DNA of 64,000 nucleotides from Macrostomum hystrix (GCA_950097015.1 CATNEN010000009.1:992001-1056000); one strand, 5' to 3'; positions 40,652-63,364 are shown, counted from the stretch's first letter. The notes: generated by a model from the letters alone, not told the origin. Program-made: numbers and translations.

Positions 40652-40699
40652 GCACTTTAGCACTAGGCTTTGAGGGGGCAATAGATTTCATGAGCTGTC

Positions 40700-44554: not shown

Positions 44555-44971
44555 TATCATTTGCCACCCCATGCACGCAGTTATAATCAGTCAGTCTCAC
44601 ACCGACTGCAAAAATCTGCTTGACTTTTGCTCTACAGAAAGTACAACCGCGAGGGCTCCGAGAGTGCGCTATTCACGCAGCCAATGAGAGCCCAGAACCA
44701 ACAGCAGCCAGTAAAGCAACAGAATTTTGGCGTTATTGGGCTGCAACTCGACCCGCCTCTCCCAGTGGATTCGCTCTGCTTGTGAAGAAAGGCATTTAAG
44801 CGCTCTCCTCGATACAAGCGTAGAAGAGAAGAACGTTACCAGAATTTCATTTCTGAATCTGGGCGTCAAAGATTCACTTCTAAGAGACTTTCGCAACACA
44901 GACAGGAGCAGCAACAATCTTCTGACTGAAGAAAGTTACTCAGCACGATAGCCTTCAGGTGTCAACTTTCG

Positions 44972-47900
44972 ATGACAACCAGAATGCTCAAGCTGCTGAT
45001 TCTGCAGCTCCTCACAGCGCTTGCATCTTGCAGACAGCCACTGGGCTCCGACAGTCGCCGTTGCACCACCATCATCATCAGTGACGGTCAGTACCAGAGC
45101 CACCGCAACGTCACGCGGCTGAATGAGGAGCTCAAAGCTAAAGTGGCCGGGTGCCAGTACGTGATCGGCGACCTTTTCCTCGAGAAAATCGGGGTCGATC
45201 AAGATTCATATGAACCCATCGACGAAGTCCGCAAACTTCGGACGGACTTTCTCGACTCCATCGTCGAGATCAGCGGACGGTTGATCATCAAGTATGTCAA
45301 CCTGGAGCGCATCACCTTGCGCAACCTGCGCATCATTCGCGGCTACAACATCCAGAATGAGGTCGATTTCTTCGCAATGGAAATCTGGCAGTTGAGATAC
45401 CCAACCCGACTGGAGCTGCCCAAGCTGAGCGCCATCCTGCAAGGCAGCGTCAAAACTGTCGGAACGTTGCATGCGGACCTGTACTGCCATTTGACTCGCA
45501 GCGTGAACTGGACGAGTCTATTCAACATATCGTCACAAATATTCCATGGAAACTCGTACGAAATGGCTTTCGGCAAACAGCTGATAAGAGTCAATGAGTT
45601 CGATGAGATCGAGAGGGCCTGCAGTTCAGTACTGAATTGCAGTAGCAGCTGCCACACTGAAAGGTCTGGTCGACAGCTCTGCTGGTCCGACGGGCAAGAC
45701 GGCTGCCAGAGCTTCAACGGATGTCTCAAGCGACCGTGCCGAAATTGCTACCGACATCCCCAAACACGCACCGAGGAGTGTTGCAACACCGACTGTCTCG
45801 GCGGCTGCTCCGACCGACCTGATGGCTGTTTCTCGTGCAGTGAAGTCATTCTGAATGGTGTCTGCAAGGGAAAGTGTCCACGCAAGTCGGACCCGAACCC
45901 TGGCACGAACAGGGTCGAAGGTTCCGACTCTAGCATGAAGCAGGTGGGCCACATCTGCGTTAACAAGTGCGAGATGCCGTTTCTCACGAGCTCCAACGAA
46001 GAGCACTGCTTGAGCGAGTGTCCTCAGACTGAGTATCCGTACCAAGGTGTCTGCAAAAAATGCAACCAGTCGTCTTGCAAGTCATGCACGATCGGAAATC
46101 GAATCATGAGTGATTATCAGGCACAGATGCTCAAGAATAGAAACTGCACGACCTGGCGAACGGACGAATCCTTGGATGTCAACGCCGACAAGCTGAGCAG
46201 CAAGGCCAGTTTAATGACTTTAGAGCAACTGAAAAATTTCCATGGAATTCTCATGATTAAAAGAACGGATCGTCTAGTTCCGAATATAAGATTTCTTAGA
46301 AACTTGCAGCTTGTCTCGGGTGACCTTCAGGTGCTGATGATGAAAGCAACATACATTGGCCTCGCCAAGCTCCGATTCGCAAAACGCCTGTTGCTGAAGG
46401 AAATCAGCGGTCTGTGCAAGGCTTGGTACCCCAGCAACAGAATTCATGAAATCATGGAGGTAACCAAGGAGTTTCAGATAACCGTCATAAACATCAGCTT
46501 CGACATCTCGAGCGAAGTGTGCCGAAATGCTGCCTGCGACCCTCAGTGCAGAGACGAGTGCTGGGGACCCGGACCGGACATGTGCGTGGCCTGCAGGAAC
46601 TTCGAGGTGGACGGTCGCTGTCATGCCACGTGCAAGCATGCAGGCCGATATCAGCTAGGCTCCTCGTGTCTGCCGTGCCACAGTGAGTGCGACGGCGGCT
46701 GCAGCGGTCCGAGCGCTTCCGAGTGCGAGCGATGCCGAAACCTGAAGGAGGACGACAAGTGCGTGGCCTCCTGCAGTCGAGAAATGCGCGCGAGCTCAAA
46801 GGGCGTCTGCTACTCGGTGGCGACAGCGAGGCTCTTTGCTGTCGGCATCGGTGTCGGCCTGCTGATTCTGCTGCTGCTGCTGCTGCTGCCGCTCGCCTAC
46901 CTGCACTACCGCAAGCGAATGCGAAAGTACGAGATGGTCGACCTGGACGAGTACCTGAAGGATCCGAGCAATCCGAGCGACATGGCGAAGCTGCTGATTG
47001 TGAACGACGACGATGTGGTGAAGCAGAAGGAGATCGGCAGCGGCGCGTTCGGCACCGTGTACAAGGGCATTCTGAGGTCCAGCACAAACAAGGGAGTGCG
47101 CGAGCTGCCTGTGGCCATCAAGGTGTTGCGCGGTCACAGTCCGAAGCTGGGACAGGAGCTGCTGAATGAGGCGAGTGTCCTGGCCAGAGTGCAGCATCCG
47201 TGCTGCATCCGGCTGGTGGCTCTGTGCCTGACCCAGGAGCCGCAGCTGATCACGGCGCTGATGCCTCGAGGCTGTCTGCTGGAGTTCCTGCGAACTCACC
47301 ACAACCAAATCGGAGCGGAGCGAATGCTGCGTTGGGGCCTGCAGGTGGCAGAGGGCATGGAGTACCTGGAGTCTCTCGGCATTGTCCACCGCGACCTGGC
47401 TGCTCGAAACGTGCTGCTTCAGTCTCCGGATCAGGTCCGCATCACGGACTTCGGTCTGGCTCGCCTGCTGAACCTGTCGGAGGGCGAGTTCGTCCAGACT
47501 GCGGGCCTCCTGCCAGTGAAGTGGCTCGGCGTGGAGTGCTTCGAGTCCGGACTGTTTAGCCACAAGTCGGATGTGTGGAGCTACGGAGTGCTTCTGTGGG
47601 AGATCTGCACCTTCGGCGAGTCGCCCTACAACCCGTACGGAATTCGGTCGGTCGAGGACATCACAGGACTGCTGAAGAAGGGCATCCGACTGAACCAGCC
47701 CGACATCTGCAGCATCGACTTCTACAACATCCTGCTGAGCTGCTGGCTGCCTCAGCCGGAGTCTCGACCGAGCTTCCGCGACTTGGTGGACACAATGACC
47801 GAGTGCCTGAATATTCCGTCCAAGTACATTGCCCAGGGCTACAGCATCGCTGATCCGGAGATGGGCACCGATGATGCCTTCGGCGATGTCAACGAGATGT

Positions 47901-48226
47901 CCCTGTCGTCGCTGGCGCAAAAGAGCGGTGGCGACCGCAGGTTCGTTTGCAGTCACGACAAGCACGGCAAGGAGCTGAACAAATACATTTCGTATCCCAG
48001 CCGCAGCTATTCGAAGAAGCATCAGCACTCTCCTGAGCGTCGGAGTTCCAGCAAGGCCAGCGAAAGCTCCAAGCTGCTGTGCCGTCGAGTCGGCGTTCAG
48101 TCCGAGCCGGACGACTATCTGACTCCAACATCGCAGAGCGGCGTTAATGGAAGCAGCGAAGGCGCTGATGCAGACAACGGAGCGTCGAGGGACTTGGATG
48201 ACTACCTGACACCGAAGAAGGTCTGA
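44972..48226 (+). CDS. EGFR: EGFR/ErbB-family receptor tyrosine kinase, paralog B (1084 aa, intronless CDS)
   Basis: Same domain order and kinase motifs as A. A CCTTCAG acceptor lies 13 nt before the ATG. The tail has two DDYLTP motifs. Confidence 0.97.
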   Translation: MTTRMLKLLILQLLTALASCRQPLGSDSRRCTTIIISDGQYQSHRNVTRLNEELKAKVAGCQYVIGDLFLEKIGVDQDSYEPIDEVRKLRTDFLDSIVEISGRLIIKYVNLERITLRNLRIIRGYNIQNEVDFFAMEIWQLRYPTRLELPKLSAILQGSVKTVGTLHADLYCHLTRSVNWTSLFNISSQIFHGNSYEMAFGKQLIRVNEFDEIERACSSVLNCSSSCHTERSGRQLCWSDGQDGCQSFNGCLKRPCRNCYRHPQTRTEECCNTDCLGGCSDRPDGCFSCSEVILNGVCKGKCPRKSDPNPGTNRVEGSDSSMKQVGHICVNKCEMPFLTSSNEEHCLSECPQTEYPYQGVCKKCNQSSCKSCTIGNRIMSDYQAQMLKNRNCTTWRTDESLDVNADKLSSKASLMTLEQLKNFHGILMIKRTDRLVPNIRFLRNLQLVSGDLQVLMMKATYIGLAKLRFAKRLLLKEISGLCKAWYPSNRIHEIMEVTKEFQITVINISFDISSEVCRNAACDPQCRDECWGPGPDMCVACRNFEVDGRCHATCKHAGRYQLGSSCLPCHSECDGGCSGPSASECERCRNLKEDDKCVASCSREMRASSKGVCYSVATARLFAVGIGVGLLILLLLLLLPLAYLHYRKRMRKYEMVDLDEYLKDPSNPSDMAKLLIVNDDDVVKQKEIGSGAFGTVYKGILRSSTNKGVRELPVAIKVLRGHSPKLGQELLNEASVLARVQHPCCIRLVALCLTQEPQLITALMPRGCLLEFLRTHHNQIGAERMLRWGLQVAEGMEYLESLGIVHRDLAARNVLLQSPDQVRITDFGLARLLNLSEGEFVQTAGLLPVKWLGVECFESGLFSHKSDVWSYGVLLWEICTFGESPYNPYGIRSVEDITGLLKKGIRLNQPDICSIDFYNILLSCWLPQPESRPSFRDLVDTMTECLNIPSKYIAQGYSIADPEMGTDDAFGDVNEMSLSSLAQKSGGDRRFVCSHDKHGKELNKYISYPSRSYSKKHQHSPERRSSSKASESSKLLCRRVGVQSEPDDYLTPTSQSGVNGSSEGADADNGASRDLDDYLTPKKV

Positions 48227-49640
48227 GTCATTCGGCTAATAATCCCATAGCTCTGTGCTGCATTGAGTGACGATTTGATAATCGATTATCGATTCAATTA
48301 TCGAGAGATTCGTTTCCTAAATTTTATCGTTTCGGACTAATGGCATTAGAGACGGAGAGAGCGAAACCTATGGCATGAGTGAAATGAAAGAGAAATGAAA
48401 AAGAACAATGTTATGCAATCCAACATCTTGAGTATGCTGAGCGGTTGTGTGTGGTTTGCATGAATTTTATTCAGATTTAGTCAGCTGAAATCAAGTCGTA
48501 TTAACCAGCAACCTGCTACTTTACACAAGTCACGTCATTGTCATGCTTAAGTGTGCAGTGTTTGGGTGTGGTCGAATGAAGTAATTTATCCTTGGGTAAC
48601 TACCCGACAGGACTACCAACCGTAACACCTCTTAGACTTTAACATTTAGCCTTCACCTTTAATCTTTAAACTTTACGAGTAGTTCTGAAATTATATCCAA
48701 GAAACTCATAAAACACTGTCACACTATCCTAGCCTCGAATGCCAGACACCATGATATTATTTTGTTATTGTTGACAGCGCTCAGCTGATTTTCGACTACT
48801 GCTCGATCTGTCCTGTGGTTCATTACAATGCAAGGCCTTCAATGCGAATTGAGATGTACTTTTAATCTGTGAAAACTAATCAGTGCTTACTCAGAATGCT
48901 TTGTTACTCAGTTCAGCCACAGCCACAGCCACAGCCACAGTAGATTTGGCACTCCAGCATGTGTTTCTGACCTTTCGAAGTTATTGTTTCTAAACGCTTC
49001 TTAGTGTATCCCAGGTGATCAATTTGATGCTTCTAAATGTTATTTTCATGAATCCTAGCTTTCGGTTTGAAGTGTTTGGGATCGCACATTTAAAATTAAC
49101 GACTAGAAGGTCGTGTCTGTCGGTGTGTCGACGCGTGCTTGCTTAATAAACGAGTGGCGTTTTTGTCAGCTTCGCTGGCGTCTATAATGGAAGGCCGAGA
49201 AATCGCTATCAACCGCAGGTGTTGCCTAAATTGCTGAGTCATGCTAGTCTTAAACTAGAATACTGATCTTTAGATCTCCTTGATACACTAGGATATAAAA
49301 AAGTGAAAACCTCGTGGGCGGACGCAGTGAATCGTTAGTATCCTTAGCCAATGATTGTGTTTATCTTATTCAGCATCCGGTGTTTCACCAAAATATGCAA
49401 TGCGCCCGCCAGTATGGACACAAGTCGATTCAATAAACACTATGGCTCGAGCTGTCAGGTATGGGCTATTTGTGAATAATTGGCACGAATAAATCTCAGT
49501 TGTGGCAGAGCGAAAAAAGCTACAGAGAGAACAGACTATTTTCTATTACTTTTTCTAATGCGGAGCTCGTGATGTTTCGTTCTCTGAGCCCGCCGTTTTC
49601 GCAGTTTGGCTGAAAGTTTGTTGAGTGCGTATGCGACAGA

Positions 49641-49780
49641 CGGAAATGGCAGAGGAAGCCAGCGTGTCCAAGCTTGTTGGATAAACATCGATTAATTAAA
49701 AATAGCATTTTAGCGGCCTGCACGTCAAATGCAGCGGGATTTGAGAATTCGAATGCGTCTTCTACAAGCCCAGTCCTGCA
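49641..49780 (-). repeat. Diverged ~135-bp duplication with 52741-52868
   Basis: Shared blocks GGAAGCCAGCG, TGTCCAAGCTTGTT, TAGCATTTTAGCGGC, GATTTGAGAATTCG and CTACAAGC occur in the same order in both copies. Confidence 0.7.
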
Positions 49781-51370
49781 GCCCATGTTTGTAGCTTAGA
49801 CCTGTGGCTAAAAACTGAGTACGAGTGTAAACAATAGCTGGGCTTTTGTTGACATTGCCGCCACCGTGCAAACGGAAACATAGCCTATTATTAGCCTGGC
49901 AGTTTTAGTGTTTATGTAAATAATTTCGATAAAAATAGAATATTTGACTTGACCGCCAGATCGCCAACCACTGAAACAGTTGCAACAATAGTCATTGTTC
50001 ATTATCTGCCTATTAAACTAGACATTTGCATTTTTGTTGTCTTACTAATGGTTGGTTGTGAGGCCATCTCGGGATATTCAAGAGAATTGCGCAGCATGCC
50101 GCAGGTCGCGAGCCACTCGATCCCTGTCTCGCCAGTAAGGTGCACTAGCTCACGATTGTTCACATTGAGGTCACATAGCTTGATGGCAGGTCTCAAAAGA
50201 TTCGGCACAACAATGAAACGGGCTGCTTGAGGTCGGCGGCAATTGTAAGCTGAAAAAAGACGGAAACATATTAAACGCGGCAAATTAAAATATTGCCCCA
50301 TTAGATTACTTAGGCCAGGTTCTCCAAACCCAGGGTCAGGCTACCTTATTAAGACTAAGAATCCTCAGGTGCATCATGGCTCTTTCCGCCCTGGTTGAGT
50401 GGAACAGACCTGCAGTAGTACTGTACTTGCTGGTCACGGGTCCAACGGCTCCAAAACCCGAGCTAAAAGTCCGTGGCCTTGTCGTATGTTGCGCGTTGGG
50501 CGGTCACCGTTCCATCAAACCTCTAGTCACACCTGATGGTGAGCATGATGCTGTGGACTGGCCGCAGAGTTTCACAATGCGCAGAGACAATTAAAGTTAC
50601 CTGAGCCTCAGTTCATCCACTTCATCATGTCGCCCTGGGAATCCATTCGTCAGCGATGAGGGATGCTGCACTGGGCAGCTCCTGCCGTGACCTACTTCAG
50701 AGAGCAAAGTTGAAGCATCGCAAACCGAATCTGTTTCTATTCACAGGTCCCGCGAGTGCTGTAAAGATCCTCGATCACTTTGAACACTGATTTACTATTC
50801 TGTTGTTGACTTTCATCTCGATGTCGTGGCAGCGAGCAGCAGCAAAATTAGCTTTGTAGGCAATTCATGGGAAACAATAAGCAATAATTGGTACTAAATT
50901 ATTGCTTATTATTGCTTCAAAATCTTCATATATTCATATCTTCATATTTCTTAAAGCCAGATGTAGCCATCCTACTTGCAACATCATTGACATATAACCA
51001 AGTGTGCGTAAACGTCTCAAGCTCGTGTATAGTTTATGGCCCAAAGGCCATCAAAGAAATAGATTGAAGTGTGCAGTAAATTCCGCAACTGTGCGGTAAA
51101 TGATACTCCACTTGATCTCCGTGCCATCCCTCTTCTGAGCTACTATGCAGTAAATCCCAGACGGGTATTGTCTATGGGCCGAAGGAGCTGGTCTTGCGCA
51201 CACACACTTGGTCATAAATCAATGCACTTATGCTAGGCTTCCTAGTGCGTAAATCTACCATTGAAAACACAACAAGACATTGTTTACGGTAGGCCTTTTG
51301 GGATGGCATAGAAAAACGAAGTCAAAATAATATAATTGCGCTTTTCGCGTTTCTTGCACTACTAAGCAAA

Positions 51371-51728
51371 GGTGGCAGAGTGGTAAACGCGTTTGCCTCT
51401 CGCACCACGGTCCCTAAGTTCGATTCCACGGCGAGGCCGCATTCATTTGGGGCGCAGCCGCGGAGAGAAGGCTTGGGGCTTGTCGTGCGATAACGCCCTT
51501 GAGGGCCAATCTCCAAGGCACAGTGAAATGTGCACTGCCTGACGATGAGAAAGTCAGGGCAGATGTACTCACCTGTGTGAGCACATGCTGGCGTACAGTA
51601 TCTGTGTGCGTGTGTGCTCAGGAGTCAGCGAAATGGGTAGAATTGCCTCCTCGCTGGCAGCGGGTCTAGTGTCACTAAATGATGTGCCATTACCTGCAGC
51701 CCTCCTGCAATTATTATTATTATTATTT
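51371..51728 (+). mobile_element. Full-length tRNA-derived SINE (~360 bp)
   Basis: Head GGTGGCAGAGTGGTAAACGCG (A box) ... AGTTCGATTCC (B box), a unique body and an (ATT)n tail. Four further partial copies occur in the window. Confidence 0.85.
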
Positions 51729-54562
51729 AAGCAAAGATACATAGAGAAAAAACATTTATTACACGAAATTTTACGGAATTTCGCGGCAACTCATGTTCAA
51801 AGAAAGGACGAGCAAATAGCGTAAGCGGCCATGGTCTTCCTGCTTTTTCTGTCTGCCCGGCAAAAAAAGTCCGAGAATGGGCTTCCTAGGTCGATGTGGA
51901 TCGCGCACTGTAAGGGCTTTGTACCATAGACACCAATGAACAGACCCATCACAGTTATTCAACAGATTTTACAAGGCAAAGGAGAGGCAGCGAGCCGTTT
52001 CTGTTCAGCGGCACAGTATTGGAACAAGGCACTGGCAACGACAAGCTAGCGGTTTCGAAGCCTGTGACTTGGGGCCACACAGCGGAGCAGCAGCACCTTG
52101 ACAAGAATCTCGACTTGTGCTACCGCTCATTTACGATGCCATTATCCAACAAGGCCAAAACACACAATTTTACATTCTTTATTATCATTCGCTTTAACAT
52201 CGCACAAAAGCACAAAAATTCATTTGATGGGATTGTGAACTAGCATTTCGAGTTCGGAATGCGTTAACAACAGTCGTTACGTAATATTTGAGGGCTAAAA
52301 TGTACATCAGTAAGGCGGTATGGTCTCCAGTGCACATTCAAGAGAGCGAAAGAGAGAGTGCATCAGGAGTGTGATATTCATACTGTCCTACGCTCTGATG
52401 TCTTCTAGCGACCCGCAAAACGTCCTCCGTTGTCATCTGGACTAGTGCGAAAGTCCTCTTCGGCTAGCAGCAGGGTCTCAGTAGGCAGTGCGAAGTTTGC
52501 GCTCCTCCGGGGTAACGCCGTCCAGATTCAGCGCGAGTCGCGTCCCATCAGAGTCCGGACGGCTATCCGCACTTTGCAGCTCCTCACGTCGGGGCCGACT
52601 GCTGATATGGACCGGATGGCGTCATCAACTGCAACCTGTTACAGTTTGACCAAAAGTCGCGAAAATGATTCCTCCGCTTTGCGTGTGGGCCTTCGGCTTC
52701 TCTGTAGGCGCTCGATTTTCACGCGAGGGTCCAGCAGTGAACGGAAGCCAGCGGTCCTTCTTGTCCAAGCTTGTTAAATAAGCATCATATAAATAAAACT
52801 AGCATTTTAGCGGCGTGCAGGTGAAATTCAGCGTGATTTGAGAATTCGGATGCTGTTGCTACAAGCGCTTCAGGTACTGATAGCTCATATGCAGATGTCC
52901 CGTTCAGTCCACAAGTTCACGACCTTGTAAAGGTTTGTGCACCCGTTTAAGTTATTAATGGCAACATTTTTTTCTTCTTATAGGGGGATATTCGTTCTCT
53001 ATTGAAGGGGGGCAATGCTTGCTTTCTGGGGGACATTGTTTCTTTGCTGCTGTGGATGTAACATTGGATCTGCTTCTGGGGGCGTCAGTGGTTGCCTTCT
53101 CTCGGAGAGAAATTGGTTGTCTGCTGCTGGGGAGAGAGTTTTTCGTCTGCTAAGGGTGTTTGCCTGCCTGTTACCCCTAGAGGGGATGTTACTCTCTGAG
53201 GTATTTGTGTTTCAGCCATTTGTAGGATGTCCAAGGGCTAGCAACTTCAGTATGTTCGTTCATCTGCGCTTGTGTCTGACTCTGCTCTCCTCTGACTAGT
53301 GTCATGAATGTACGCTAGGTGTTTAAGTCCTGGGTGGGAGTTCAGTTCAATTTAATGTTTATCCTGATCATCGGATTTCAATGAAAATACGAGACCCGCT
53401 GCGGCTGAATCGAAATTGGCTGCGGGCATGGGTCGAAGCCTTTGACGCTCAAGCGCTGTCAAAGTGAGTGTAGGACACCAATGAAAAGCTGTCGCTGACT
53501 CGGTGTCTGGGCAGTCTTGGTGTGGCCCGATTCATCTATGTCAAGCCGCTAGTCGCACCTAAAAAATGAAAGACGTGAGAATTATCAACGATGGGCTTAA
53601 GGCCTAGACAAGAAAAGAAGCTACTGCTGACGATCAGGACGAGCAGGCCAACCGGGAATCGTGCGGCCGGCCGGATGCATCCAACTCGGCGGACGGCTCA
53701 GCTGCTTCAAGACAAGCCAGCCTCGGTGCTCATGACCACTGAAACTGTGGAGCTGCCCCGGCCAGAGCTCGGAGAACAGGCAGCCGTGTGGACTGCGTTC
53801 TCGTCGACCATTCAGCTACAAAGACTAGTGATGTGGTTTTGCGTTATGGAGTGTCGGAATTTTTTGGTGATGTGAAGCTGCTATAACCCTGTCTCTTTGT
53901 TTTCTTCTTCGGTGGTTTGTGAGACAATTGTGGGGAGCAATGTTACGAGCGTAGTTTGTGCTCTGACGTACAAGTTGTGCTTTTTTCACTTAGTCCAAGC
54001 TGCGCCAGCTCTCCTGTTATTTGTATCGTGCATGTAAGCTTGGTGGTTTAGTCCTGGGTTACTGTTACTCAAATTCAGTGTTCATCCTGTCGCGTGTTAT
54101 ATTGACAGACCTTCGTGTGATTGCGTCTCTTAAGTGTGGGTTTTTTCTTGTCATCGCAAGCTCTAGCCTTGGCTTGTTATTCATAAAAGACCATCAATGA
54201 TTGTCGGGATGGATTGAGCTGGTGTGTTTAAATAGCCCAACTGGGCTTGGTGTCATTTTTGGTTATTCCTCAATAAATCAAAAGCAAGAGTTGCGTGAAT
54301 GTCGACCTGAACCGATTAAACCAAGAAGCATTGGTAAGCTTCTGCTAACTACGCTTGTTACGATTTGCTCAATAGTAATAAGACACCTAAAATAGTAGCT
54401 TTAGGGTGACGCATGTGAAGCTCAGAAGTTTATATAGACTTCAGTCACGGCAAACCATTATTGCATTGCTAAGAACATCAGAAGATTCCGAATCAACCAC
54501 CACCAGCGCCATCAGCGCGGAGTCAACACCCATTAATTACGAGCTAGATTGTTACGGCAACT

Positions 54563-56823
54563 TCACTTCAGGTAGATGAGGAAGCGGTCAGCGAACTTGG
54601 CGCCGCCAGATTGCAGCGCGCTGGCCTGACTCTCCGTGTACACCAGCGCTGGCGCCTTTCCGCGCCAGCCGTTGTAGCCCCAGGCGCAGGGGTCGCGCGC
54701 GTCTGACACGGTCCAGAAGGCCCTGTCGCCTCCACAGCCGGCGTATGAGAACAGGATGAAGAAGCCGCGCTTCCAGTGCGTGTCGCCAGCGATTGAGAAT
54801 TTCTGGAACCTTGGATCGGCCACGCTTGGGTTGTGGTAGAACCCGTCAGAGTGCTTCAGTTCGCGGACTGCACGGTAGGGAAAGCTGGACACCACGCGGC
54901 TCTGGTGGAACCAGTTCTGCTTGTCCAGTCCCTGCCTTCTGATGGAGACGTCGAACACGACCTGGGCGACTTTGCGGTTGGCGACTCGCATCTCCGCCAC
55001 CAGGTACTGCCGGCCACTGGCGATCACAGCCTGGCTGAGGTTGTCGATCAAGTCCGATCGGTAGACTTCAGGTAGAGATCCTGTGCTTGCCTTGGAGAAT
55101 GCGGGCTGCCTGTTCAGGAAGGTGGCCACGGCTTGATGACCGGAGCCCGCCTTCACAGTGAACAGAATAATCTTGTCGTTCTCTGCGGGCGGGTACATGT
55201 ATTTGACGCTTTTGCACTTATAAAATATATTCGAGTCGATTAAGTAAGTACAGCACTAGCAGAGTTTTGCATGGATCTGCATGTGAAGTTGCATTCGTTG
55301 AATCCACAAAACATGATTCGATTGAAAGGCCAAAAAAATCATCGAAAAGTTCGTCCTAAAAAGCAACATTTGCTGAATCGAGAATTGAGAATACTCCCAA
55401 AAGCATGATGATCTTGGCAGAATAGATTTCGAAATGAGTAGAGTTTTTGAACCCTCACACCGGCCATCTCACCGAACGTGAAGGCTCCAGGTAAGGCCTT
55501 TCTGGACACAGCAAACGGCGGGAGCACAGGCGTCTCAAGGCGCAGGTAGACGAGGAAGCGATCAGCAAAGGCTGTGTTGCCCTCGTGGTAGGGCTTGCTG
55601 TCCACTTTGCTGTATACCAGAAGAGGTGACTTTCCCTTCCAGCCGCGGTTGCTGTAGGTGCAGGGGTCCCTCACATCGGAGACGTAGAACAGCCCAGTGT
55701 CCTTCTCGCAGCCTCCGTAGTGACGGTTGATTTGAAATCGGCGCAAAAGGCTCGCACCACGGTTATCTCCGTCGATGCCAAAGATGTTGTAGTTGCTGCG
55801 GCCGAACCAGAAAGGCTTTGTGGACAGCAGCCTCTTGGGGCTGAACCAGCTGTTCTTGTCCAAGCCCTCCGGCTCGGCGCTGAACACCGCCTGCGAAACT
55901 GTGCGACCAGCTTCGTCGCGCATCTCAGCAACGATCTGCCATCGGCCGCCTTTGGCCACCCGTGCGAGCTGGTCGAGGAGGCCTGACCGGTAGAGGGTGG
56001 GCAGGGAGCCATCCATCGGCACTGCGTAGGTTTGCTCGCTCTGAAAAGTTGGGTAGACCTGGTGACCGCTGTTGGCCTTCACAGTGTAGAGCAGCAGCTT
56101 GTCGGACTCTGCAGAGGCGTGATTTCGAGTTCTTAGGAAACAATGCGGTATCTGAGAACACAGTAAAATGGTGATGAACTTCATGTGAAAGCCGAACTTA
56201 CCGAACCAGAAGGCGTTCCTGAAGGGTCGCTTGACAGCATTGGCCACCGGAAGGCCGACGCGGCTCAGTTCAAAGCTCTGGCCGTTAGCCTTGCCGTGGA
56301 AGGTGAATCTCAGAGAGCCTAGCAGCTCAGCATGGTCCGGACCGGTGAAGCGCAAGGCGCGCTTGAGTCGGAGACAGGCGGCGCGGCTCCGGCAGCGGAA
56401 GGTGACTACGGGATGGCGACCTCGGTTCCAGCGTCCTGAAACCGTCACCGAGGGGCAGCTGCTGGCACAAGCACCTGTAATGGACTTGCGAATAGTCACC
56501 TTGAAGCTTTGCACCTGCAACAGCTCCCACTTGCGGGTGCCGTCGGCTGGCAGCTTCACTCCGGACTCAACGACAAGGGGCACCGTCATGAAGAACCCCT
56601 GGCCCAGCGGGTCCGGCCGGATGTCCACGCCCCTGCGCGGCAACCGCATGGCGATGTAGGGCTCCACGACGCGAACTTCGTTGTTAGCGAAGCAGCGCAG
56701 CCGAGCGCCACGGAACATCAGCGCGGGAGCCTCCTCCCAACTGCCAGGCTGCTGCTCCGACAGGCCACCCAGAGCGGACGGTGTCGTCAGCAGCAGAATG
56801 CTCAGGCTGAAGAAATAGAACAT
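54563..56823 (-). CDS. Secreted protein (~625 aa) with an unknown N-terminal domain and two tandem copies of an uncharacterised ~200-aa domain (3 exons)
   Basis: Exons 56823-56202, 56108-55473 and 55182-54563, with donors TTCG|GTAAGT and TTCG|GTGAGA and acceptors CAG|AG (both introns phase 1). The product starts with a signal peptide. Exons 2 and 3 are paralogous: DKxxLxTVKAxSGHQ, YRSxLxD, GLDKxxWF, xxIxGD, YxGCxxD, VSDxRDPC, GWxGKxP, FADRFLxYL. The two ORF-track entries are parts of one gene. Confidence 0.8.
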
Positions 56824-57438
56824 TGCGGCACTCTTGTTTGAATAATATTTTAGACCGAATCAGAAAAGATAGTTGAACGCAAAAATGGCAATGGCTCTCG
56901 CATTCTTATACACAATTCTTATGCACCTAGGCAGCTGCTAGGAGGAGAGCTGAGAGCTCTGAAATGGCTGCGTTTGCAGCATATGGTGAGCGAAGCCACC
57001 GCGGAGGCGAGACCGGAGGTATGAGGGCCTGGATCAACAGCTGCAATTCGAGTCAGGGGACCACCACCTCGCGCCGCCCTCACCTGACAAACTCTTCAGC
57101 CACGAAGCTGCCTGCCAGGGTCATCTCTGTCTTCAACTTTCAAACCGCTCTGCGCCTCGAGTTCGACCTGCGTGAGCAAGTGCCAGGCTGAGTTGCTGCT
57201 CCTGAGACTTGAGCAGCCTAATCCAAGAGAATGCTCAGTGGCTGCAGTTTGCCAACAACTTGACGGACAGAAGGGAATCTTTACTGAGAAGCTATTCTGT
57301 TCGCTATTGACTCTTTGCGATTAAACTTCTGGGACTTGAGTCGACAGCTTTTTTCTTTATTTTCCAGGCTGAAATTGTTTCGCGTGTCAAGTGCTTGACT
57401 CTGTCATTTAGTAGCCATTCGGTGCCTTGCGCCATTAC

Positions 57439-57814
57439 TGATTGTGCATTCTACTGACATGTAAGAAGTAGGGTGTCACAAACATTGATTGTGCATTCCA
57501 CTGACATGTAAGAAGTAGGGTGTCACAAACATTGATTGTGCATTCTACTGACATGTAAGAAGTAGGGTGTCACAAACATTGATTGTGCATTCCACTGACA
57601 TGTAAGAAGTAGGGTGTCACAAACATTGATTGTGCATTCTACTGACATGTAAGAAGTAGGGTGTCACAAACATTGATTGTGCATTCTACTGACATGTAAG
57701 AAGTAGGGTGTCACAAACATTGATTGTGCATTCTACTGACATGTAAGAAGTAGGGTGTCACAAACATTGATTGTGCATTCTACTGACATGTAAGAAGTAG
57801 GGTGTCACAAACAT
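57439..57814. repeat. 47-bp minisatellite, 8 copies
   Basis: Unit TGATTGTGCATTCTACTGACATGTAAGAAGTAGGGTGTCACAAACAT. Confidence 0.97.
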
Positions 57815-58400
57815 TTTTGGTATTTGTGAATCCACCAAAAAATGTAAAAAAGTAAGAAGCAGCCAGGGTGGCCGGAAGTAGAGTTAGAGAGGCCAGATGC
57901 TGTGAAGACTGCCATGCGCAGGCTCAGTAGATGGCGAGTGAAAAAAGGCCATCGAAAGACTTCCTGTCACGCCAGCAGTTGTTCTTGTTATTAGCATTAC
58001 GTGGGGTGCAAAAATAAAAGCATTTGAGGCTCAGATCTGAACAGCTGACCCGGCAGAGTCCAAAGGGTGATGGCCTGCGGCGTCTGTGCTGAACTGCCTG
58101 ACATCAGCAGGCCTGATGTGCATCTGAAACATTTTTGGCGCTTGCCTCACGGCCTGCGGTTCTGTCTTGCGTCATCATCCGCTGATCTGCTGCTTTCGAC
58201 TTCTAGACAGTCGGATAAATAATTCCACTTTGGCTTCCAACAGGCCACTTACTGTATATTTTTATACTTTATCCATGGACTGGGTGGGACGCCACACCCG
58301 CCCTCCAATACCCTGAAGTTACTGGTCCTACCCATTTAATAGCTGCGTGAACTGAACCAACAAAGAGCTAATTGTCTTGCTAAAGAACAAAAATGATTTT

Positions 58401-58471
58401 GCGCATTCGGGAATCGAACCTTCGATCTTCAAGTGGTGATGGCAACGCTCTAACCACTAGGCTACAATCGC
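58401..58471 (-). pseudogene. tRNA-like sequence (pseudo-tRNA or solo SINE head)
   Basis: GCGATTGTAGCCTAGTGGTTAGAGCG...GAAGGTTCGATTCCCGAATGCGC has A and B boxes and a TTTTT a few bases downstream. The anticodon and T stems do not pair, so no amino acid is assigned. Confidence 0.55.
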
Positions 58472-59192
58472 TACCTTTTTGATACAAAAATGATTAAATT
58501 TCCAGATGTGTAAATATCATGCTTCCATTCCAACTGATGTTTACATGGAACAAGCTTAGGTGTGAAATAACTTCGGGAATAATATCTACGCAGTGCAAGG
58601 TAACTAGTCTCCACTGGCAAAGTTTTCGAATGCGAGGCAAAATTCTAGGTCCAGATAAATGCAACGAATACGATATGCGCGGTTATTTTCGAATAGCAAA
58701 AACTCGATGACACAACGCATGCAAATAGCTGTAATTTCACACAGCTGAAATTTATAACTTATGGGCATGGCCATCCACTTGTGAAAAATAAGCTGTGCAA
58801 CAATGAGGCCATTCGGCCGCCTAATTTGGCCAAATGGCGGGCGCTCTCATTGAATGTGCGCACACAAATGAGGCGGCACACAGTGGCCCGCCGCCCAGCA
58901 CGCACACAAGTTATCTGGGGGCGCGCTCTGCCGTGAGTACGCTAGTGGCGGTGAGCCATTAAGTCAGCCCGCCCAGCCAATTGGGTACGGGCAAACCCTG
59001 CCCCCTACTGGCTCATTGTGCGTAATAGCTGATAAGCCCGCAGCGGAGGTGAAGACTGGGAGGCCTCTTATTTCCTGTAGCAAAATCCAACCTGGTGTTG
59101 TCAAAACTTGCACACAGTGCAACAGCCGCTCCACACAGCCAAGATCTGAATCTCCTATTGGCGCAAACTCACAAAGCACCTAATCGAAAGGC

Positions 59193-59407
59193 TATATTTA
59201 AGATCGCCCTCGGACTAGAAGAGCTTGGCGGAAAACGCTCTGGCCTTTCAAACTGTCACAGAGCCGTTGCCCAACTTCACTTCCAAATTCGGGCCTCGCC
59301 GTGAGTGCGCAACTGTGGGCTGATTAGATAAAGCCGTGAATTCACTTTCAAAAGTCTGCGGAAAATCGCAGAGCAGAAACTGCTATCTCCACAATTCTCG
59401 CTGACAG
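59193..59407 (+). promoter_or_regulatory. TATA-like box, non-coding exon and 5'UTR intron of EGFR-C
   Basis: TATATTTAA at 59193, donor GCC|GTGAGT at 59301 and acceptor CTGACAG at 59407, 31 nt before the ATG. CCAAT and GC-box-like motifs at ~58965-58985. Confidence 0.55.
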
Positions 59408-59438
59408 GTGCAGGAAAGAGGAAAACTGCGCAATTTCA

Positions 59439-62400
59439 ATGCGTTCGACAACTACTACTATGCTTGAGCTGCTGCTTCTGCAACTGCTCGCAAGCCTCGG
59501 CTCCAGCAGCCAGCCACTGGGCTCCAACAGTCGCCTGTGCAAGACCATCACCATCACGAACGGACTGTACCAGACCCACCGGAACATCAGCCGACTGCAC
59601 GCAGAACTCAGCGCCACGGTGGCCGGATGCCAGTATTTGAATGGCGATCTCAATATCTTGAATGTCGGCGCTGATCCGACATCCGAGCAGCCTCTCGACG
59701 ACGCTATCCGTGGACTTGAGACAGACTTTCTCGACTCCATCGTTGAGATCAGCGGGCGGTTGGTCATTAAACGTGTCAACTTGAAGCGACTCACCTTGCG
59801 CAACCTGCGGTCTATACGCGGCTACAATCACGAGAATGTGAGTCCATTCTACTCAATGGAAGTCTGGCAGACGAGATACCCCACCCAACTGGAGCTGCCC
59901 AAGCTGAGCGCCATCCTGCAAGGCAGTGTCAACATGATTGGCACAGTGCATGCGGACCTGTACTGCCATTTGACTCGCAGCGTACACTGGCTGAGTCTGT
60001 TTCAAAACCCAGCGCTGCAAAAATTCATCGATGATGCCTCCCTCATGGCTCTCGGCGACCAACTAATAAGAGTCGATAAGTTCGATGAGATCGAGAGGGC
60101 CTGCAGTTCAGTACTGAATTGCAGTAGCAGCTGCCACACTGAAAGGTCTGGTCGACAGCTCTGCTGGTCCGACGGGCAAGACGGCTGCCAGAGCTTCAAC
60201 GGATGTCTCGAGCGACCGTGCCTAAATTGCTACCGACATCCCCAAACACGCACCGAGGAGTGTTGCAACACCGACTGTCTCGGCGGCTGCTCCGACCGGC
60301 CTGATGGCTGTTTCTCCTGTCGCGATGTCATTCTGCATGGGGTTTGCAAGGGCGCGTGTCCACTCAAGTCGGACCCGAACCCTGGCACAAATAGGGTCGA
60401 CAGTTTCAACTCCAGCATGAAGCGGGTGGGCCACATCTGTGTGAACAAGTGCGAGATGCCGTTTGTGACGAGCTCCAACGAAGAGCACTGCTTGAGCGAG
60501 TGTCCTCAGACTGAGTATCCGTACCAAGGTGTCTGCAAAAAATGCACCCTGTCGTCTTGCAAGTCATGCACGATCACAAAGCTAATCCTGAATGACGATG
60601 AGGCACAGAAGCTCAAGGACAGAAACTGCACGACCTGGCGAACGGACGCCTCCTTGGAAGTCAGCGGCGACAAGCTGAGCAGCAAGGCCAGTCTGATGAC
60701 ACTGGAATCACTACAAATATTTTATGGTCGCTTGTTTATCAAGAGAAGCGAAGGCCTGGTACAAAATCTAGGAATTCTCAAGAATTTAAAGTTCGTGTCG
60801 GACAACTTTGGAATTACGTTTTTAAAGACAACCTACATTGGTCTCGCCAAGCTCAGATACGCAAAGTCTCTCTTGTTTATGAGGGTGAGCGGTCTGTGCA
60901 AGGCTTGGTACCCCAGCAACAGAATTCATGAAATCATGGAGGTCACCAAGGAGTTTCCGATATCCATCAGGGACATCAGCTTCGACAACTCGAGCGAAGT
61001 GTGCCGAAATGCTGCCTGCGACCCTCAGTGCAGAGACGAGTGCTGGGGACCCGGACCGGACATGTGCGTGGCCTGCAGGAACTTCGAGGTGGACGGTCGC
61101 TGTCATGCCACGTGCAAGCATGCAGGCCGATATCAGCTAGGCTCCTCGTGTCTGCCGTGCCACAGTGAGTGCGACGGCGGCTGCAGCGGTCCGAGCGCTT
61201 CCGAGTGCGAGCGATGCCGAAACCTGAAGGAGGACGACAAGTGCGTGGCCTCCTGCAGTCGAGAAATGCGCGCGAGCTCAAAGGGCGTCTGCTACTCGGT
61301 GGCGACAGCGAGGCTCTTTGCTGTCGGCATCGGTGTCGGCCTGCTGATTCTGCTGCTGCTGCTGCTGCTGCCGCTCGCCTACCTGCACTACCGCAAGCGA
61401 ATGCGAAAGTACGAGATGGTCGACCTGGACGAGTACCTGAAGGATCCGAGCAATCCGAGCGACATGGCGAAGCTGCTGATTGTGAACGACGACGATGTGG
61501 TGAAGCAGAAGGAGATCGGCAGCGGCGCGTTCGGCACCGTGTACAAGGGCATTCTGAGGTCCAGCACAAACAAGGGTGTGCGCGAGCTGCCTGTGGCCAT
61601 CAAGGTGTTGCGCGGTCACAGTCCGAAGCTGGGACAGGAGCTGCTGAATGAGGCGAGTGTCCTGGCCAGAGTGCAGCATCCGTGCTGCATCCGGCTGGTG
61701 GCTCTGTGCCTGACCCAGGAGCCGCAGCTGATCACGGCGCTGATGCCTCGAGGCTGTCTGCTGGAGTTCCTGCGAACTCACCACAACCAAATCGGAGCGG
61801 AGCGAATGCTGCGTTGGGGCCTGCAGGTGGCAGAGGGCATGGAGTACCTGGAGTCTCTCGGCATTGTCCACCGCGACCTGGCTGCTCGAAACGTGCTGCT
61901 TCAGTCTCCGGATCAGGTCCGCATCACGGACTTCGGTCTGGCTCGCCTGCTGAACCTGTCGGAGGGCGAGTTCGTCCAGACTGCGGGCCTCCTGCCAGTG
62001 AAGTGGCTCGGCGTGGAGTGCTTCGAGTCCGGACTGTTTAGCCACAAGTCGGATGTGTGGAGCTACGGAGTGCTTCTGTGGGAGATCTGCACCTTCGGCG
62101 AGTCGCCCTACAACCCGTACGGAATTCGGTCGGTCGAGGACATCACAGGACTGCTGAAGAAGGGCATCCGACTGAACCAGCCCGACATCTGCAGCATCGA
62201 CTTCTACAACATCCTGCTGAGCTGCTGGCTGCCTCAGCCGGAGTCTCGACCGAGCTTCCGCGACTTGGTGGACACAATGACCGAGTGCCTGAATATTCCG
62301 TCCAAGTACATTGCCCAGGGCTACAGCATCGCTGATCCGGAGATGGGCACCGATGATGCCTTCGGCGATGTCAACGAGATGTCCCTGTCGTCGCTGGCGC

Positions 62401-62702
62401 AAAAGAGCGGTGGCGACCGCAGGTTCGTTTGCAGTCACGACAAGCACGGCAAGGAGCTGAATGCGTATATCTCAGACCCGACCAGCCGCTACGCACCGCA
62501 GCTGCGCCACCCTCCGGTGGGTCCAGTGAGTTCCAGCGACACCAGCGAGAGCTCCAAGCTGCTGTGCGGCCAGTTCAGTGTTCAGTCCGAGCCGGACGAC
62601 TATCTGACCCCGACATCGCCGAGCGGCGTAAATGGAAGCAGCGATGCAGCTGAAGGTTCAAACGGCGTCTTGGATGACTACCTGACGCCGAAGAAGGCTT
62701 GA
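59439..62702 (+). CDS. EGFR: EGFR/ErbB-family receptor tyrosine kinase, paralog C (1087 aa, intronless CDS)
   Basis: Same architecture as A and B. The domain IV-to-kinase protein sequence is essentially identical to B. Confidence 0.97.
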   Translation: MRSTTTTMLELLLLQLLASLGSSSQPLGSNSRLCKTITITNGLYQTHRNISRLHAELSATVAGCQYLNGDLNILNVGADPTSEQPLDDAIRGLETDFLDSIVEISGRLVIKRVNLKRLTLRNLRSIRGYNHENVSPFYSMEVWQTRYPTQLELPKLSAILQGSVNMIGTVHADLYCHLTRSVHWLSLFQNPALQKFIDDASLMALGDQLIRVDKFDEIERACSSVLNCSSSCHTERSGRQLCWSDGQDGCQSFNGCLERPCLNCYRHPQTRTEECCNTDCLGGCSDRPDGCFSCRDVILHGVCKGACPLKSDPNPGTNRVDSFNSSMKRVGHICVNKCEMPFVTSSNEEHCLSECPQTEYPYQGVCKKCTLSSCKSCTITKLILNDDEAQKLKDRNCTTWRTDASLEVSGDKLSSKASLMTLESLQIFYGRLFIKRSEGLVQNLGILKNLKFVSDNFGITFLKTTYIGLAKLRYAKSLLFMRVSGLCKAWYPSNRIHEIMEVTKEFPISIRDISFDNSSEVCRNAACDPQCRDECWGPGPDMCVACRNFEVDGRCHATCKHAGRYQLGSSCLPCHSECDGGCSGPSASECERCRNLKEDDKCVASCSREMRASSKGVCYSVATARLFAVGIGVGLLILLLLLLLPLAYLHYRKRMRKYEMVDLDEYLKDPSNPSDMAKLLIVNDDDVVKQKEIGSGAFGTVYKGILRSSTNKGVRELPVAIKVLRGHSPKLGQELLNEASVLARVQHPCCIRLVALCLTQEPQLITALMPRGCLLEFLRTHHNQIGAERMLRWGLQVAEGMEYLESLGIVHRDLAARNVLLQSPDQVRITDFGLARLLNLSEGEFVQTAGLLPVKWLGVECFESGLFSHKSDVWSYGVLLWEICTFGESPYNPYGIRSVEDITGLLKKGIRLNQPDICSIDFYNILLSCWLPQPESRPSFRDLVDTMTECLNIPSKYIAQGYSIADPEMGTDDAFGDVNEMSLSSLAQKSGGDRRFVCSHDKHGKELNAYISDPTSRYAPQLRHPPVGPVSSSDTSESSKLLCGQFSVQSEPDDYLTPTSPSGVNGSSDAAEGSNGVLDDYLTPKKA

Positions 62703-63364
62703 GCCTCTGGACTCTCTGTTTCGTGAGTTTGAAGTTGCAGTGGCGTAAATGACTGATTTATTTGTAACACATTTATTTGCTGCATAGCTACCTAGGTTTC
62801 ATTGGCTACCGGCCAGACAGATTCGGATATACTTTTGTTTTACTTACTCGATACGCTCGAAAATGGGAAGAATTCATCGCTAATACCCGATGTTGAATTG
62901 AATTTTAACGTACAGTTTTTCTATAACACTGTGAGTATGGCAATAGCCCATGCAAGGGTCATCGCCGGAACTTCGTGATTCAGGCATGTTTGCTGTCAGC
63001 TGTCAGCTGAGTGGTAACTTCCCAACCTTTTCAGAAGAAATATCTCCCCTTGCCGTAGAGATTTCGCTTATGTATAATATACTACGCAATACCGAATCGA
63101 GTTTGTTAATCCTAATCCCTTTTTTCCTCGATCCAGGCGCTGTATAATGTACCAGAACTCATTTTTTTAATCTAAGGACTTTGTACGCTACATTCGCTTA
63201 CATTAAAGCAGTACTTTAATCACTTTCTCTTGAGTTGCCATTTGAGCAGTAATGTTTGTATAAATGCAAAAATTTGTATTTGTATAAATGTTTGTATAAA
63301 ATAAAATAAGCATTTTATTATTTGTGTCTCACACTCGGCCGAAAAAATAAACAATGCGTGCCGT

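What the first reader, a model, noticed from the sequence alone, without database searches (positions are those of the whole stretch)
44972..61000. B vs C ectodomains are a patchwork: ligand-binding L1 and L2 hypervariable, CR1 near-identical
Seen: L1 (B ~45060-45595 / C ~59530-60078) and L2 (B ~46090-46405 / C ~60575-60890) are roughly 60% identical in protein by eye. The intervening Cys-rich block (FDEIERAC...PDGCFS, B ~45599-45835 / C ~60081-60315) has only a few nucleotide differences. Inside L1 and L2, short nucleotide-identical islands (LELPKLSAILQGS, HADLYCHLTRSV, SGLCKAWYPSNRIHEIMEV) alternate with radically changed stretches, such as FLEKIGVDQDSYE vs NILNVGADPTSEQ and DRLVPNIRFLRNLQLVSGDLQVLMM vs EGLVQNLGILKNLKFVSDNFGITFL. 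Established: EGFR ligands are clamped between domains I (L1) and III (L2). Inference: diversifying selection acts on ligand-contact surfaces and resists conversion, implying different or rapidly evolving ligands such as mating, self/non-self or pathogen cues.
Basis: partly seen in the sequence, partly recalled or inferred. Interest (0 to 1): 0.85.

Follow-up and report, generated by a model that had tools for sequence, protein, structure and literature searches.

The report
Mosaic gene conversion between flatworm EGFR paralogs
Two neighbouring intronless EGF-receptor genes of a Macrostomum-like flatworm are a patchwork of recently copied (gene-converted) blocks and very old, diverged ligand-binding segments, so the "hypervariable" patches are ancient rather than fast-evolving.

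Summary
B (44972-48226) and C (59439-62702) are intact, intronless EGFR-family receptor kinases. L1 is 64% and L2 59-65% identical in protein. The first 80 codons of CR1 differ at 4 of 237 nt, and CR2-TM-kinase differs at 2 synonymous sites in 1.45 kb. The short islands are nucleotide-identical (39, 37, 56 nt; permutation P<1e-4).

In the "radically changed" patches synonymous sites are saturated (pS 0.75-0.80; pooled dS about 1.1) and dN/dS is 0.28. At 4-fold sites these patches are as diverged between B and C as either is from the Macrostomum lignano homolog. The patchwork is therefore mosaic interlocus gene conversion laid over an old duplication. A third, inverted copy (A) shares only the CR2-TM-kinase cassette, with the same left boundary.

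Three weaker signals leave room for adaptive divergence of the ligand-binding heads:
- B's L1/L2 evolved about 2.5 times faster than C's at nonsynonymous sites only.
- The recently converted L2 flanks show dN/dS of about 1.1-1.9.
- Positions aligned to EGF-contact residues differ more often (odds ratio 3, P=0.02; approximate mapping).

Domain-restricted conversion is already known, for example in clustered protocadherins. The scan had already noted the shared cassette on this same stretch.

The parts
44972..48226 (+). Gene B: intronless EGFR-family receptor tyrosine kinase, 1084 aa
   Evidence: Single ORF. Pfam Recep_L, Furin-like, GF_recep_IV and PK_Tyr (E 7e-79). Kinase motifs GSGAFG, VAIK, HRDLAARN and DFG are present.
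59439..62702 (+). Gene C: paralog of B, 1087 aa, 85% identical overall
   Evidence: Nucleotide similarity to B is confined to the coding sequence, 44968-48227 against 59444-62703.
34014..37166 (-). Gene A: third, inverted paralog, 1050 aa. Its ectodomain is 33-45% identical to B/C, but its CR2-TM-kinase is near-identical to theirs.
44972..45400 (+). B signal peptide plus old L1 patch (aa 1-143; C 59439-59879)
   Evidence: dS 0.70, dN 0.26, dN/dS 0.37. At 4-fold sites B-C differ at 0.40, against 0.46 and 0.49 to M. lignano P0001.
45409..45504 (+). Two exact islands inside L1: 45409-45447 and 45468-45504 (C 59888-59926 and 59947-59983)
   Evidence: Identical runs of 39 and 37 nt, P<1e-4. The same codons differ from P0001 at 38-46% of 4-fold sites, so this is not nucleotide-level constraint.
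45584..45835 (+). CR1a recent conversion tract (B aa 205-288; C 60066-60317)
   Evidence: dS 0.04, with 72 consecutive conserved codons lacking a silent change. B and C are sisters in this segment's tree.
45836..45961 (+). CR1b, intermediate-age segment with the predicted dimerisation arm (B aa 289-330)
   Evidence: dS 0.48, dN 0.12. The position of the arm is inferred from alignment to Drosophila EGFR.
46064..46186 (+). L2a: CR1/L2 linker, L2 N-cap helix and first strand (B aa 365-405; C 60546-60668). Recently homogenised, but rich in amino-acid changes.
   Evidence: sd 2.5, nd 16.5, dN/dS 1.9. Most changes are single-nucleotide. The helix lies at model residues 360-369.
46211..46390 (+). L2 core, the oldest patch (B aa 414-473; C 60693-60872)
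   Evidence: 34 synonymous differences at 42 synonymous sites (saturated), dN 0.33. 4-fold differences are 0.64 for B-C against 0.57 and 0.64 to P0001.
46394..46507 (+). L2c: the 56-nt island 46406-46461, then a variable last L2 strand (B aa 475-512; C 60876-60989)
46507..47979 (+). Shared signalling cassette in B: CR2, TM, juxtamembrane, kinase and proximal tail. Identical to C 60989-62461 apart from one position.
   Evidence: Identical runs of 588 and 884 nt. Two synonymous differences over aa 521-1003.
34285..35626 (-). The same cassette in A, 97.8% identical to B 46494-47832
   Evidence: Boundaries are sharp at codons 508/509 and 954/955 of B. Kinase dS between A and B is 0.04.

Best explanation
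B and C are old paralogs in a cluster of intronless EGFR-family receptor genes of a flatworm related to Macrostomum lignano. Interlocus (ectopic) gene conversion has repeatedly overwritten parts of one copy with the other, giving tracts of different ages:
- CR2-TM-kinase: dS about 0.005, also shared with the inverted copy A.
- CR1a, end of CR1 and the L2 flanks: dS 0.04-0.16.
- Mid CR1: dS 0.48.
- L1 and distal tail: dS about 0.7.
- L2 core: synonymous sites saturated, apparently never converted.

The 'radically changed' patches are therefore surviving ancient divergence, kept under net purifying selection (dN/dS about 0.28). They are not rapidly evolving hypervariable regions.

Shown: the tracts, their ages, the segment-wise conflict between trees, and intact ORFs with every mature-ectodomain cysteine conserved.

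Inferred: the arrangement is functional. Each copy keeps its own ligand-binding head on a common dimerisation and signalling cassette. Conversions that reach into L1 or the L2 core are removed by selection, are blocked by divergence, or both. The B head has diverged faster than the C head since the split.
For: 1. Conversion tracts. Identical runs far exceed permutation expectations. Silent differences are clustered, z=-5.7. dS ranges from 0 to saturation along one ORF.
2. The islands are not conserved at silent sites in the M. lignano homolog, so nucleotide-level constraint does not explain them.
3. Segment trees conflict. In L1+L2 core, B, C and Mlig012838 form an unresolved trio. In CR1a and in CR1b+L2a, B and C are sisters. 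In CR2-kinase, A, B and C form one clade, although A's ectodomain lies outside the B/C/Mlig012838 group.
4. The old patches are old. 4-fold differences between B and C are 0.40 (L1) and 0.64 (L2 core), against 0.46-0.64 to P0001 and 0.32 for the kinase against P0001. The flanks of B and C are unalignable.
5. Purifying selection. Pooled old patches have dN/dS 0.28. All cysteines of the mature ectodomain are conserved and the kinase motifs are intact. The AlphaFold model (mean pLDDT 84) matches EGFR/HER ectodomains over about 600-680 alignment columns.
6. The cassette's left boundary lies at the L2/CR2 junction in both comparisons: 46494 for A versus B/C, and 46507 for B versus C.
7. Both copies occur in independent runs, and unitigs break at the shared islands. 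In runs X2 and X3 coverage starts 160-180 nt upstream of B's ATG, whereas the DNA runs continue upstream. This suggests that X2 and X3 are RNA and that both genes are transcribed.
8. The dispersed M. lignano homologs keep kinases only 75-80% identical to each other, consistent with proximity-dependent conversion in this window's cluster.
Against: - No population data and only one close outgroup, so selection against conversion in L1/L2 is inferred, not shown.
- The 37-56-nt islands are short for conversion tracts.
- dS estimates in the old patches are saturated, so their ages are only lower bounds.
- dS against P0001 is higher in the ectodomain than in the kinase, so orthology of P0001 to B/C is uncertain.
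- dN/dS of about 1-2 in the L2 flanks is not explained by purifying selection alone.
- The library kind of runs X2 and X3 is not on record, so the expression evidence is indirect.
Confidence: 0.72

Rival explanations
1. One reading: positive diversifying selection on the ligand-contact faces of L1 and L2 drives rapid change and actively resists homogenisation, because the ligands differ or evolve quickly.
For: - Positions aligned to human EGF-contact residues differ between B and C in 11 of 18 cases against 103 of 300 elsewhere in L1/L2 (odds ratio 3.0, P=0.022).
- At several of these positions (aligned to human Y45, L69, Y89 and L382) B alone departs from a state shared by C and M. lignano.
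- B-unique amino-acid changes outnumber C-unique ones 37 to 20 in the old patches (P=0.033), while silent changes run 9 to 19 the other way. Branch dN is 0.22 for B against 0.09 for C.
- The young L2 flanks have dN/dS 1.1-1.9 and about ten times the nonsynonymous density of equally young CR1 tracts (Fisher P=7.5e-8).
- Three of those changes toggle N-glycosylation sequons.
Against: - In the large variable patches dN/dS is 0.28 and dS is saturated.
- dN/dS in the flanks is not significantly above 1 (binomial P=0.19 and 0.43), and the windows were chosen after seeing the data.
- About 11 of the 15 or so flank changes lie in the CR1/L2 linker and N-cap helix, not on the ligand sheet.
- The contact mapping rests on an alignment at about 25% identity with indels, and on contact residues partly recalled from memory.
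- Contact residues are surface residues, which vary more in any case.
- Relaxed constraint on B explains the asymmetry equally well.
Confidence: 0.15
2. A purely mechanistic, neutral mosaic. Conversion tracts fall at random and stop where identity is too low. L1 and the L2 core happened to diverge early and can no longer convert. No selection shapes the boundaries, and the copies may be functionally redundant.
For: - Conversion depends on sequence identity (established knowledge), so escape from conversion reinforces itself.
- Tract ages form a continuum.
- The region is full of minisatellites, which may promote ectopic exchange.
Against: - The left boundary of the cassette falls within 13 nt of the L2/CR2 domain junction in two separate comparisons.
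- All three ORFs are intact with dN/dS below 1 in the diverged heads, which argues against redundancy or decay.
- B and C differ in apparent transcript depth.
Confidence: 0.12
3. An artefact: B and C are haplotypes or a mis-assembled duplicate, and the identical blocks are collapsed sequence.
For: Macrostomum genomes are known to be duplicated and hard to assemble (general knowledge). The cassette is identical over 1.45 kb.
Against: - The flanks of B and C share no similarity.
- Different genes and minisatellites surround them.
- Exact B-type and C-type unitigs coexist in four runs from two studies.
- A carries 23 mismatches of its own in the cassette.
Confidence: 0.02

Closest known systems
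Regional gene conversion in clustered protocadherin genes (fugu, zebrafish, mammals)
   Same: Neighbouring paralogs of a cell-surface receptor share a more than 99% identical 3' part, with a discrete boundary inside the ectodomain. Their N-terminal recognition domains stay divergent, and silent-site identity is used as the argument for conversion (PMC1852091, read).
   Different: That family is adhesion molecules with variable exons spliced to constant exons. Here each copy is a complete intronless receptor kinase gene. One copy is inverted, and small converted islands also lie inside the recognition domains.
Flatworm EGFR expansions (Barberan et al. 2016, PMC4914847)
   Same: Independent EGFR expansion in Macrostomorpha, with 8 EGFRs reported in M. 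lignano. The closest proteins to A, B and C are M. lignano Mlig012838, Mlig027475 and Mlig030557.
   Different: That paper reports introns in all planarian EGFRs and does not describe conversion. Here the genes are single-exon, clustered and partly homogenised. The three M. lignano homologs found lie on different contigs, and their kinases are only 75-80% identical to each other.
Human ErbB family (EGFR, HER2, HER3, HER4)
   Same: Paralogs with the same four-domain ectodomain and kinase but different ligand-binding heads. Ligand is clamped between domains I and III. Fold match has probability 1.0 over the whole ectodomain.
   Different: Human paralogs are dispersed and show no concerted evolution. 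Sequence identity to the flatworm ectodomain is only 20-22%.
CEACAM N-domain gene conversion in primates (PMC8860441)
   Same: Gene conversion of receptor extracellular domains shapes binding specificity (abstract read).
   Different: In CEACAMs conversion shuffles the binding domain itself, and positive selection is demonstrated. Here the binding domains are the parts least converted, and positive selection is not demonstrated.

Membership tests
EGFR/ErbB receptor tyrosine kinases | Ectodomain L1 - Cys-rich 1 - L2 - Cys-rich 2 | tested here: met
   Pfam finds Recep_L_domain (L1 only), Furin-like and GF_recep_IV. L2 is missed by Pfam but is present in the AlphaFold model (pLDDT 83-93 there). 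Foldseek matches EGFR, HER2-4 and Drosophila EGFR ectodomains over 600-680 columns at probability 1.0. The best PDB sequence hits are Drosophila EGFR and C. elegans LET-23.
EGFR/ErbB receptor tyrosine kinases | Single transmembrane helix followed by an active-type tyrosine kinase domain | tested here: met
   PF07714 at E 7e-79. GSGAFG, VAIK, HRDLAARN and DFG are present in A, B and C. A hydrophobic stretch FAVGIGVGLLILLLLLLLPLAYL lies between CR2 and the kinase.
EGFR/ErbB receptor tyrosine kinases | Binds EGF-domain ligands between domains I and III | not testable with these tools
   Only a homology mapping of contact positions was possible.
Interlocus gene conversion (partial concerted evolution) between paralogs | Identical or near-identical tracts longer than chance, including silent sites, next to diverged sequence | tested here: met
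Interlocus gene conversion (partial concerted evolution) between paralogs | Different segments of the gene support different trees | tested here: met
   A groups with B/C only in CR2-kinase. B and C are sisters in CR1 but form an unresolved trio with the M. lignano homolog in L1 and the L2 core.
Interlocus gene conversion (partial concerted evolution) between paralogs | The copies are separate loci, not alleles | tested here: met
   Unrelated flanks. Both copies are present in each of four runs.
Receptor domains under positive diversifying selection (as in MHC, KIR, protocadherin EC2-3) | dN/dS above 1 in the variable regions | tested here: not met
   dN/dS is 0.28 in the old patches, with saturated dS. 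In the young L2 flanks it is 1.1-1.9, not significantly above 1.
Receptor domains under positive diversifying selection (as in MHC, KIR, protocadherin EC2-3) | Codon-site models on many orthologs or alleles detect selected sites | not testable with these tools
   Only M. lignano homologs exist in the searched collections.
Receptor domains under positive diversifying selection (as in MHC, KIR, protocadherin EC2-3) | Variable residues cluster on the ligand-binding face | tested here: inconclusive
   Odds ratio 3.0, P=0.022, on an approximate alignment-based mapping.

The most novel reading that the evidence does not exclude
The cluster may work as a modular receptor array. Gene conversion would keep one common dimerisation and signalling cassette (dimer-arm tip, CR2, TM, kinase) compatible across all copies, so that receptors with different, selectively protected ligand-binding heads can heterodimerise freely. 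The B head would be adapting to a new ligand, with positive selection at contact-equivalent residues and at the L2 hinge and flanks.
Probability: 0.2. Interest if true: 0.65.

Novelty: new member of a known kind. Interest (0 to 1): 0.42.

Why it matters
The case shows how an expanded growth-factor receptor family can evolve in modules: one signalling cassette kept uniform by conversion, and ligand-binding heads kept apart. It gives a concrete, testable set of natural chimeras for asking what determines ligand specificity in a regenerating flatworm. It is also a caution for paralog analysis. Strong amino-acid divergence next to identical blocks looks like hypervariability, but silent sites show that it is simply older sequence. 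The principle is already documented in other receptor clusters, so the advance is a new example in the EGFR family, not a new mechanism.

Tried and rejected
- More orthologs for codon-site models. The word-indexed search with the full protein, the exhaustive representative search with the ectodomain and a fragment-length search (blank) returned only three M. lignano subfamilies. Site models were therefore not attempted. With three or four sequences and saturated dS they would have no power.
- P0068, a 3053-aa cluster member, looked like a possible tandem-EGFR fusion. It carries only one EGFR unit, at residues 1975-3053.
- Nucleotide-level constraint (RNA or regulatory element) as the cause of the identical islands. 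Rejected, because the same codons differ freely from the M. lignano homolog at 4-fold sites.
- GC-biased conversion. GC3 is highest in the cassette (0.81) and lowest in the L2 core (0.47-0.50). The dispersed M. lignano gene shows a similar profile (0.86 against 0.72), so this is not diagnostic.
- Three-dimensional mapping of variable residues. The structure tool returns no coordinates, so only an alignment-based mapping through a fish EGFR (P0007) was possible. The contact list came from PMC4282322 plus my recollection of human numbering.
- Literature search for Macrostomum plus gene conversion. Nothing relevant was found.
- Reads tool.


Full report
WHAT IS THERE

The window holds three long single-exon ORFs: A (34014-37166, minus strand, 1050 aa), B (44972-48226, 1084 aa) and C (59439-62702, 1087 aa). 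Each carries Pfam Recep_L_domain, Furin-like, GF_recep_IV and a tyrosine kinase domain (E about 7e-79). The kinase motifs GSGAFG, VAIK, HRDLAARN and DFG are intact.

Pfam sees only the first L domain. An AlphaFold model of the B ectodomain (18-sequence alignment, mean pLDDT 84, with 83-93 across the L2 region) matches EGFR, HER2-4 and Drosophila EGFR ectodomains over 600-680 columns at probability 1.0. The best PDB sequence hits are Drosophila EGFR and C. elegans LET-23. These are therefore EGFR-family receptors with the full L1-CR1-L2-CR2 ectodomain.

The nearest proteins in the searched collections are three Macrostomum lignano subfamilies. Mlig012838 (P0001) is 61% identical in the ectodomain and 95% in the kinase. 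The others are Mlig027475 and Mlig030557. The window's own proteins are not in those collections, so the genome is from a related flatworm. P0001 and P0003 are also single-exon genes. Barberan et al. reported an independent EGFR expansion in Macrostomorpha, with 8 genes in M. lignano (PMC4914847).

CHECK OF THE OBSERVATION

Every element is confirmed.
- The CR1 block has 4 differences in 237 nt.
- The three named islands are exact nucleotide matches of 39, 37 and 56 nt.
- In 10,000 permutations of the 297 ectodomain differences, the six longest identical runs were never reached at their rank.
- With silent changes alone, the runs test gives z=-5.7. There are stretches of 72 and 41 conserved codons without a single silent difference.
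- One correction: the middle of CR1 (aa 289-330) is not near-identical (dS 0.48).

Similarity between the B and C loci starts 4 nt before B's ATG and ends 1 nt after the stop. The flanks are unrelated.

Logan unitigs from four runs of two studies contain exact B-type and exact C-type sequence, and they break at the shared islands. The mosaic is therefore not an assembly artefact.

HOW OLD ARE THE PATCHES

Synonymous divergence between B and C varies from zero to saturation along one ORF:
- CR2-TM-kinase-proximal tail (aa 521-1003): 2 silent differences in 1.45 kb.
- CR1a: dS 0.04.
- End of CR1 plus L2a: dS 0.08.
- L2c: dS 0.16.
- Mid CR1: dS 0.48.
- L1 and distal tail: dS about 0.65-0.7.
- L2 core (aa 414-473): 34 silent differences at 42 silent sites.

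Pooled old patches give dS 1.07, dN 0.30 and dN/dS 0.28.

At 4-fold sites shared with the M. lignano homolog, B and C differ at 0.40 (L1) and 0.64 (L2 core). Each differs from P0001 at 0.46-0.64. The kinase differs from P0001 at only 0.32. The variable patches are therefore at least as old as the split from the M. lignano lineage.

That is the result.

WHY CONVERSION

Silent-site identity cannot come from protein-level constraint. The islands are not conserved at silent sites in P0001 (4-fold difference 0.38-0.46 against 0.15 between B and C), so nucleotide-level constraint is also excluded.

Segment trees disagree:
- In L1 plus the L2 core, B, C and Mlig012838 form an unresolved trio.
- In CR1a and in CR1b+L2a, B and C are sisters.
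- In CR2-kinase, A, B and C form one clade, although A's ectodomain is only 29-45% identical to every other sequence compared and lies outside the B/C/Mlig012838 group.

A shares only B 46494-47832 at 97.8%, with sharp edges at codons 508/509 and 954/955. The perfect B/C block starts at 46507. The left edge of the shared cassette therefore falls at the L2/CR2 junction in both comparisons.

The three M. lignano homologs lie on different contigs, and their kinases are only 75-80% identical to each other. This fits proximity-dependent conversion in this window's cluster.

[quoted passage not shown] There, neighbouring paralogs share a more than 99% identical 3' part with a discrete boundary inside the ectodomain, and the N-terminal recognition domains stay divergent (PMC1852091).

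WHAT REMAINS OF THE SELECTION IDEA

Three signals are real but weak.

1. Asymmetry between the copies. In the old patches B has 37 unique amino-acid states against 20 for C (P=0.033). Silent changes run the other way (9 against 19). Branch dN is 0.22 for B and 0.09 for C, and B's branch in the protein tree is 0.44 against 0.18. The B head has evolved faster at the protein level only, which means relaxed or positive selection.

2. The young L2 flanks. Segments aa 365-405 and 475-512 have few silent differences but 28.5 nonsynonymous ones (dN/dS 1.1; 1.9 for the first segment alone). That is significantly above 0.3 (P=4e-4) and about ten times the nonsynonymous density of equally young CR1 tracts (P=7.5e-8). 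It is not significantly above 1, and the windows were chosen after seeing the data. Most of these are single-nucleotide changes, which suggests substitution after homogenisation. By the model's secondary structure, most of those in aa 365-405 lie in the CR1/L2 linker and the N-cap helix, not on the ligand sheet. Three of them toggle N-glycosylation sequons.

3. Contact-equivalent positions. I mapped human EGF-contact residues onto B and C through a fish EGFR in the alignment. The contact list came from PMC4282322, and the human numbering was partly from memory. Of 18 mapped positions, 11 differ between B and C, against 103 of 300 other L1/L2 positions (odds ratio 3.0, P=0.022). At the positions aligned to Y45, L69, Y89 and L382, B alone departs from the state shared by C and M. 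lignano. The alignment is at about 25% identity with indels, and surface residues vary more in any case. I call this test inconclusive.

EXPRESSION AND POLYMORPHISM

In runs X2 and X3 (library kind not on record) coverage of the B locus begins at 44812 and 44791, which is 160-180 nt upstream of the ATG. Runs X1 and X6 continue upstream. This suggests X2 and X3 are RNA and that B is transcribed.

C-type unitigs are roughly four to nine times deeper than B-type ones in X2 and X3.

RNA-labelled runs of other organisms hold 33-39% of C's ectodomain words but only 8-11% of B's. This is consistent with C being the more conserved or more highly expressed copy.

Four single-base variants in B's L1 and the start of CR1 were seen among runs: one silent, and three amino-acid changes (F69V, Q140E, E209Q).

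VERDICT

The anatomy is right. The mechanism is mosaic gene conversion over an old duplication. The heads are maintained, not hypervariable. Adaptive divergence of the B head and of the L2 flanks is possible but unproven.

The first-stage scan had already noted the shared cassette on this same stretch (s1-258392), and further EGFR copies just beyond the window (s1-258413, s1-258414). I could not read those copies.

Noticed in passing
window 38539-39726, 40004-40652, 41546-43426, 43986-44548, 57439-57815, 63365-64000: Large minisatellite arrays (units of 27, 24, 16, 30, 47 and 30 nt, up to 118 copies) flank the three receptor genes. One ends about 420 nt upstream of B's ATG. They may promote ectopic exchange.
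   Followed up: partly
window 55339-56823 (-) and 54563-55198 (-): Two ORFs of 494 and 211 aa lie between B and C. They have no Pfam hit and look like paralogs of each other (shared motifs such as TVKA.SGHQ and FADRFL.YL).
   Followed up: no
window 46454 (loose end in run X1): One contig shares the B/C island up to 46454 and then continues with a third sequence that is neither B nor C. This points to a further B/C-like paralog or allele that differs in the last L2 strand.
   Followed up: no
window 44791-44812: Contigs of runs X2 and X3 start here, while DNA runs continue upstream. This is a possible transcript 5' end of gene B. C-type unitigs are roughly four to nine times deeper than B-type ones in these runs.
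   Followed up: partly
B aa 179, 185, 365, 507; C aa 133, 324, 517: N-glycosylation sequons turn over. B has 7 and C has 6, and only 3 are shared. Several of the young L2-flank substitutions create or destroy a sequon.
   Followed up: partly
window 46772-46825 (B aa 601-618) versus A: Inside the otherwise homogenised cassette, A keeps a small diverged patch at the extracellular juxtamembrane end of CR2: 5 amino-acid changes, about 7 silent changes and a 1-codon indel.
   Followed up: no
L001 10001-13273, L003 10001-13276, L002 10001-17121: The M. lignano homologs P0001 and P0003 are also single-exon genes. The P0002 gene model spans 7.1 kb, so it is interrupted. This suggests that the macrostomid EGFR expansion descends from an intronless ancestor.
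   Followed up: partly
P0068 (MetaClust, 3053 aa): An older M. lignano gene model fuses about 1970 unrelated residues to an Mlig012838-type EGFR. It is probably a mis-joined gene model.
   Followed up: partly
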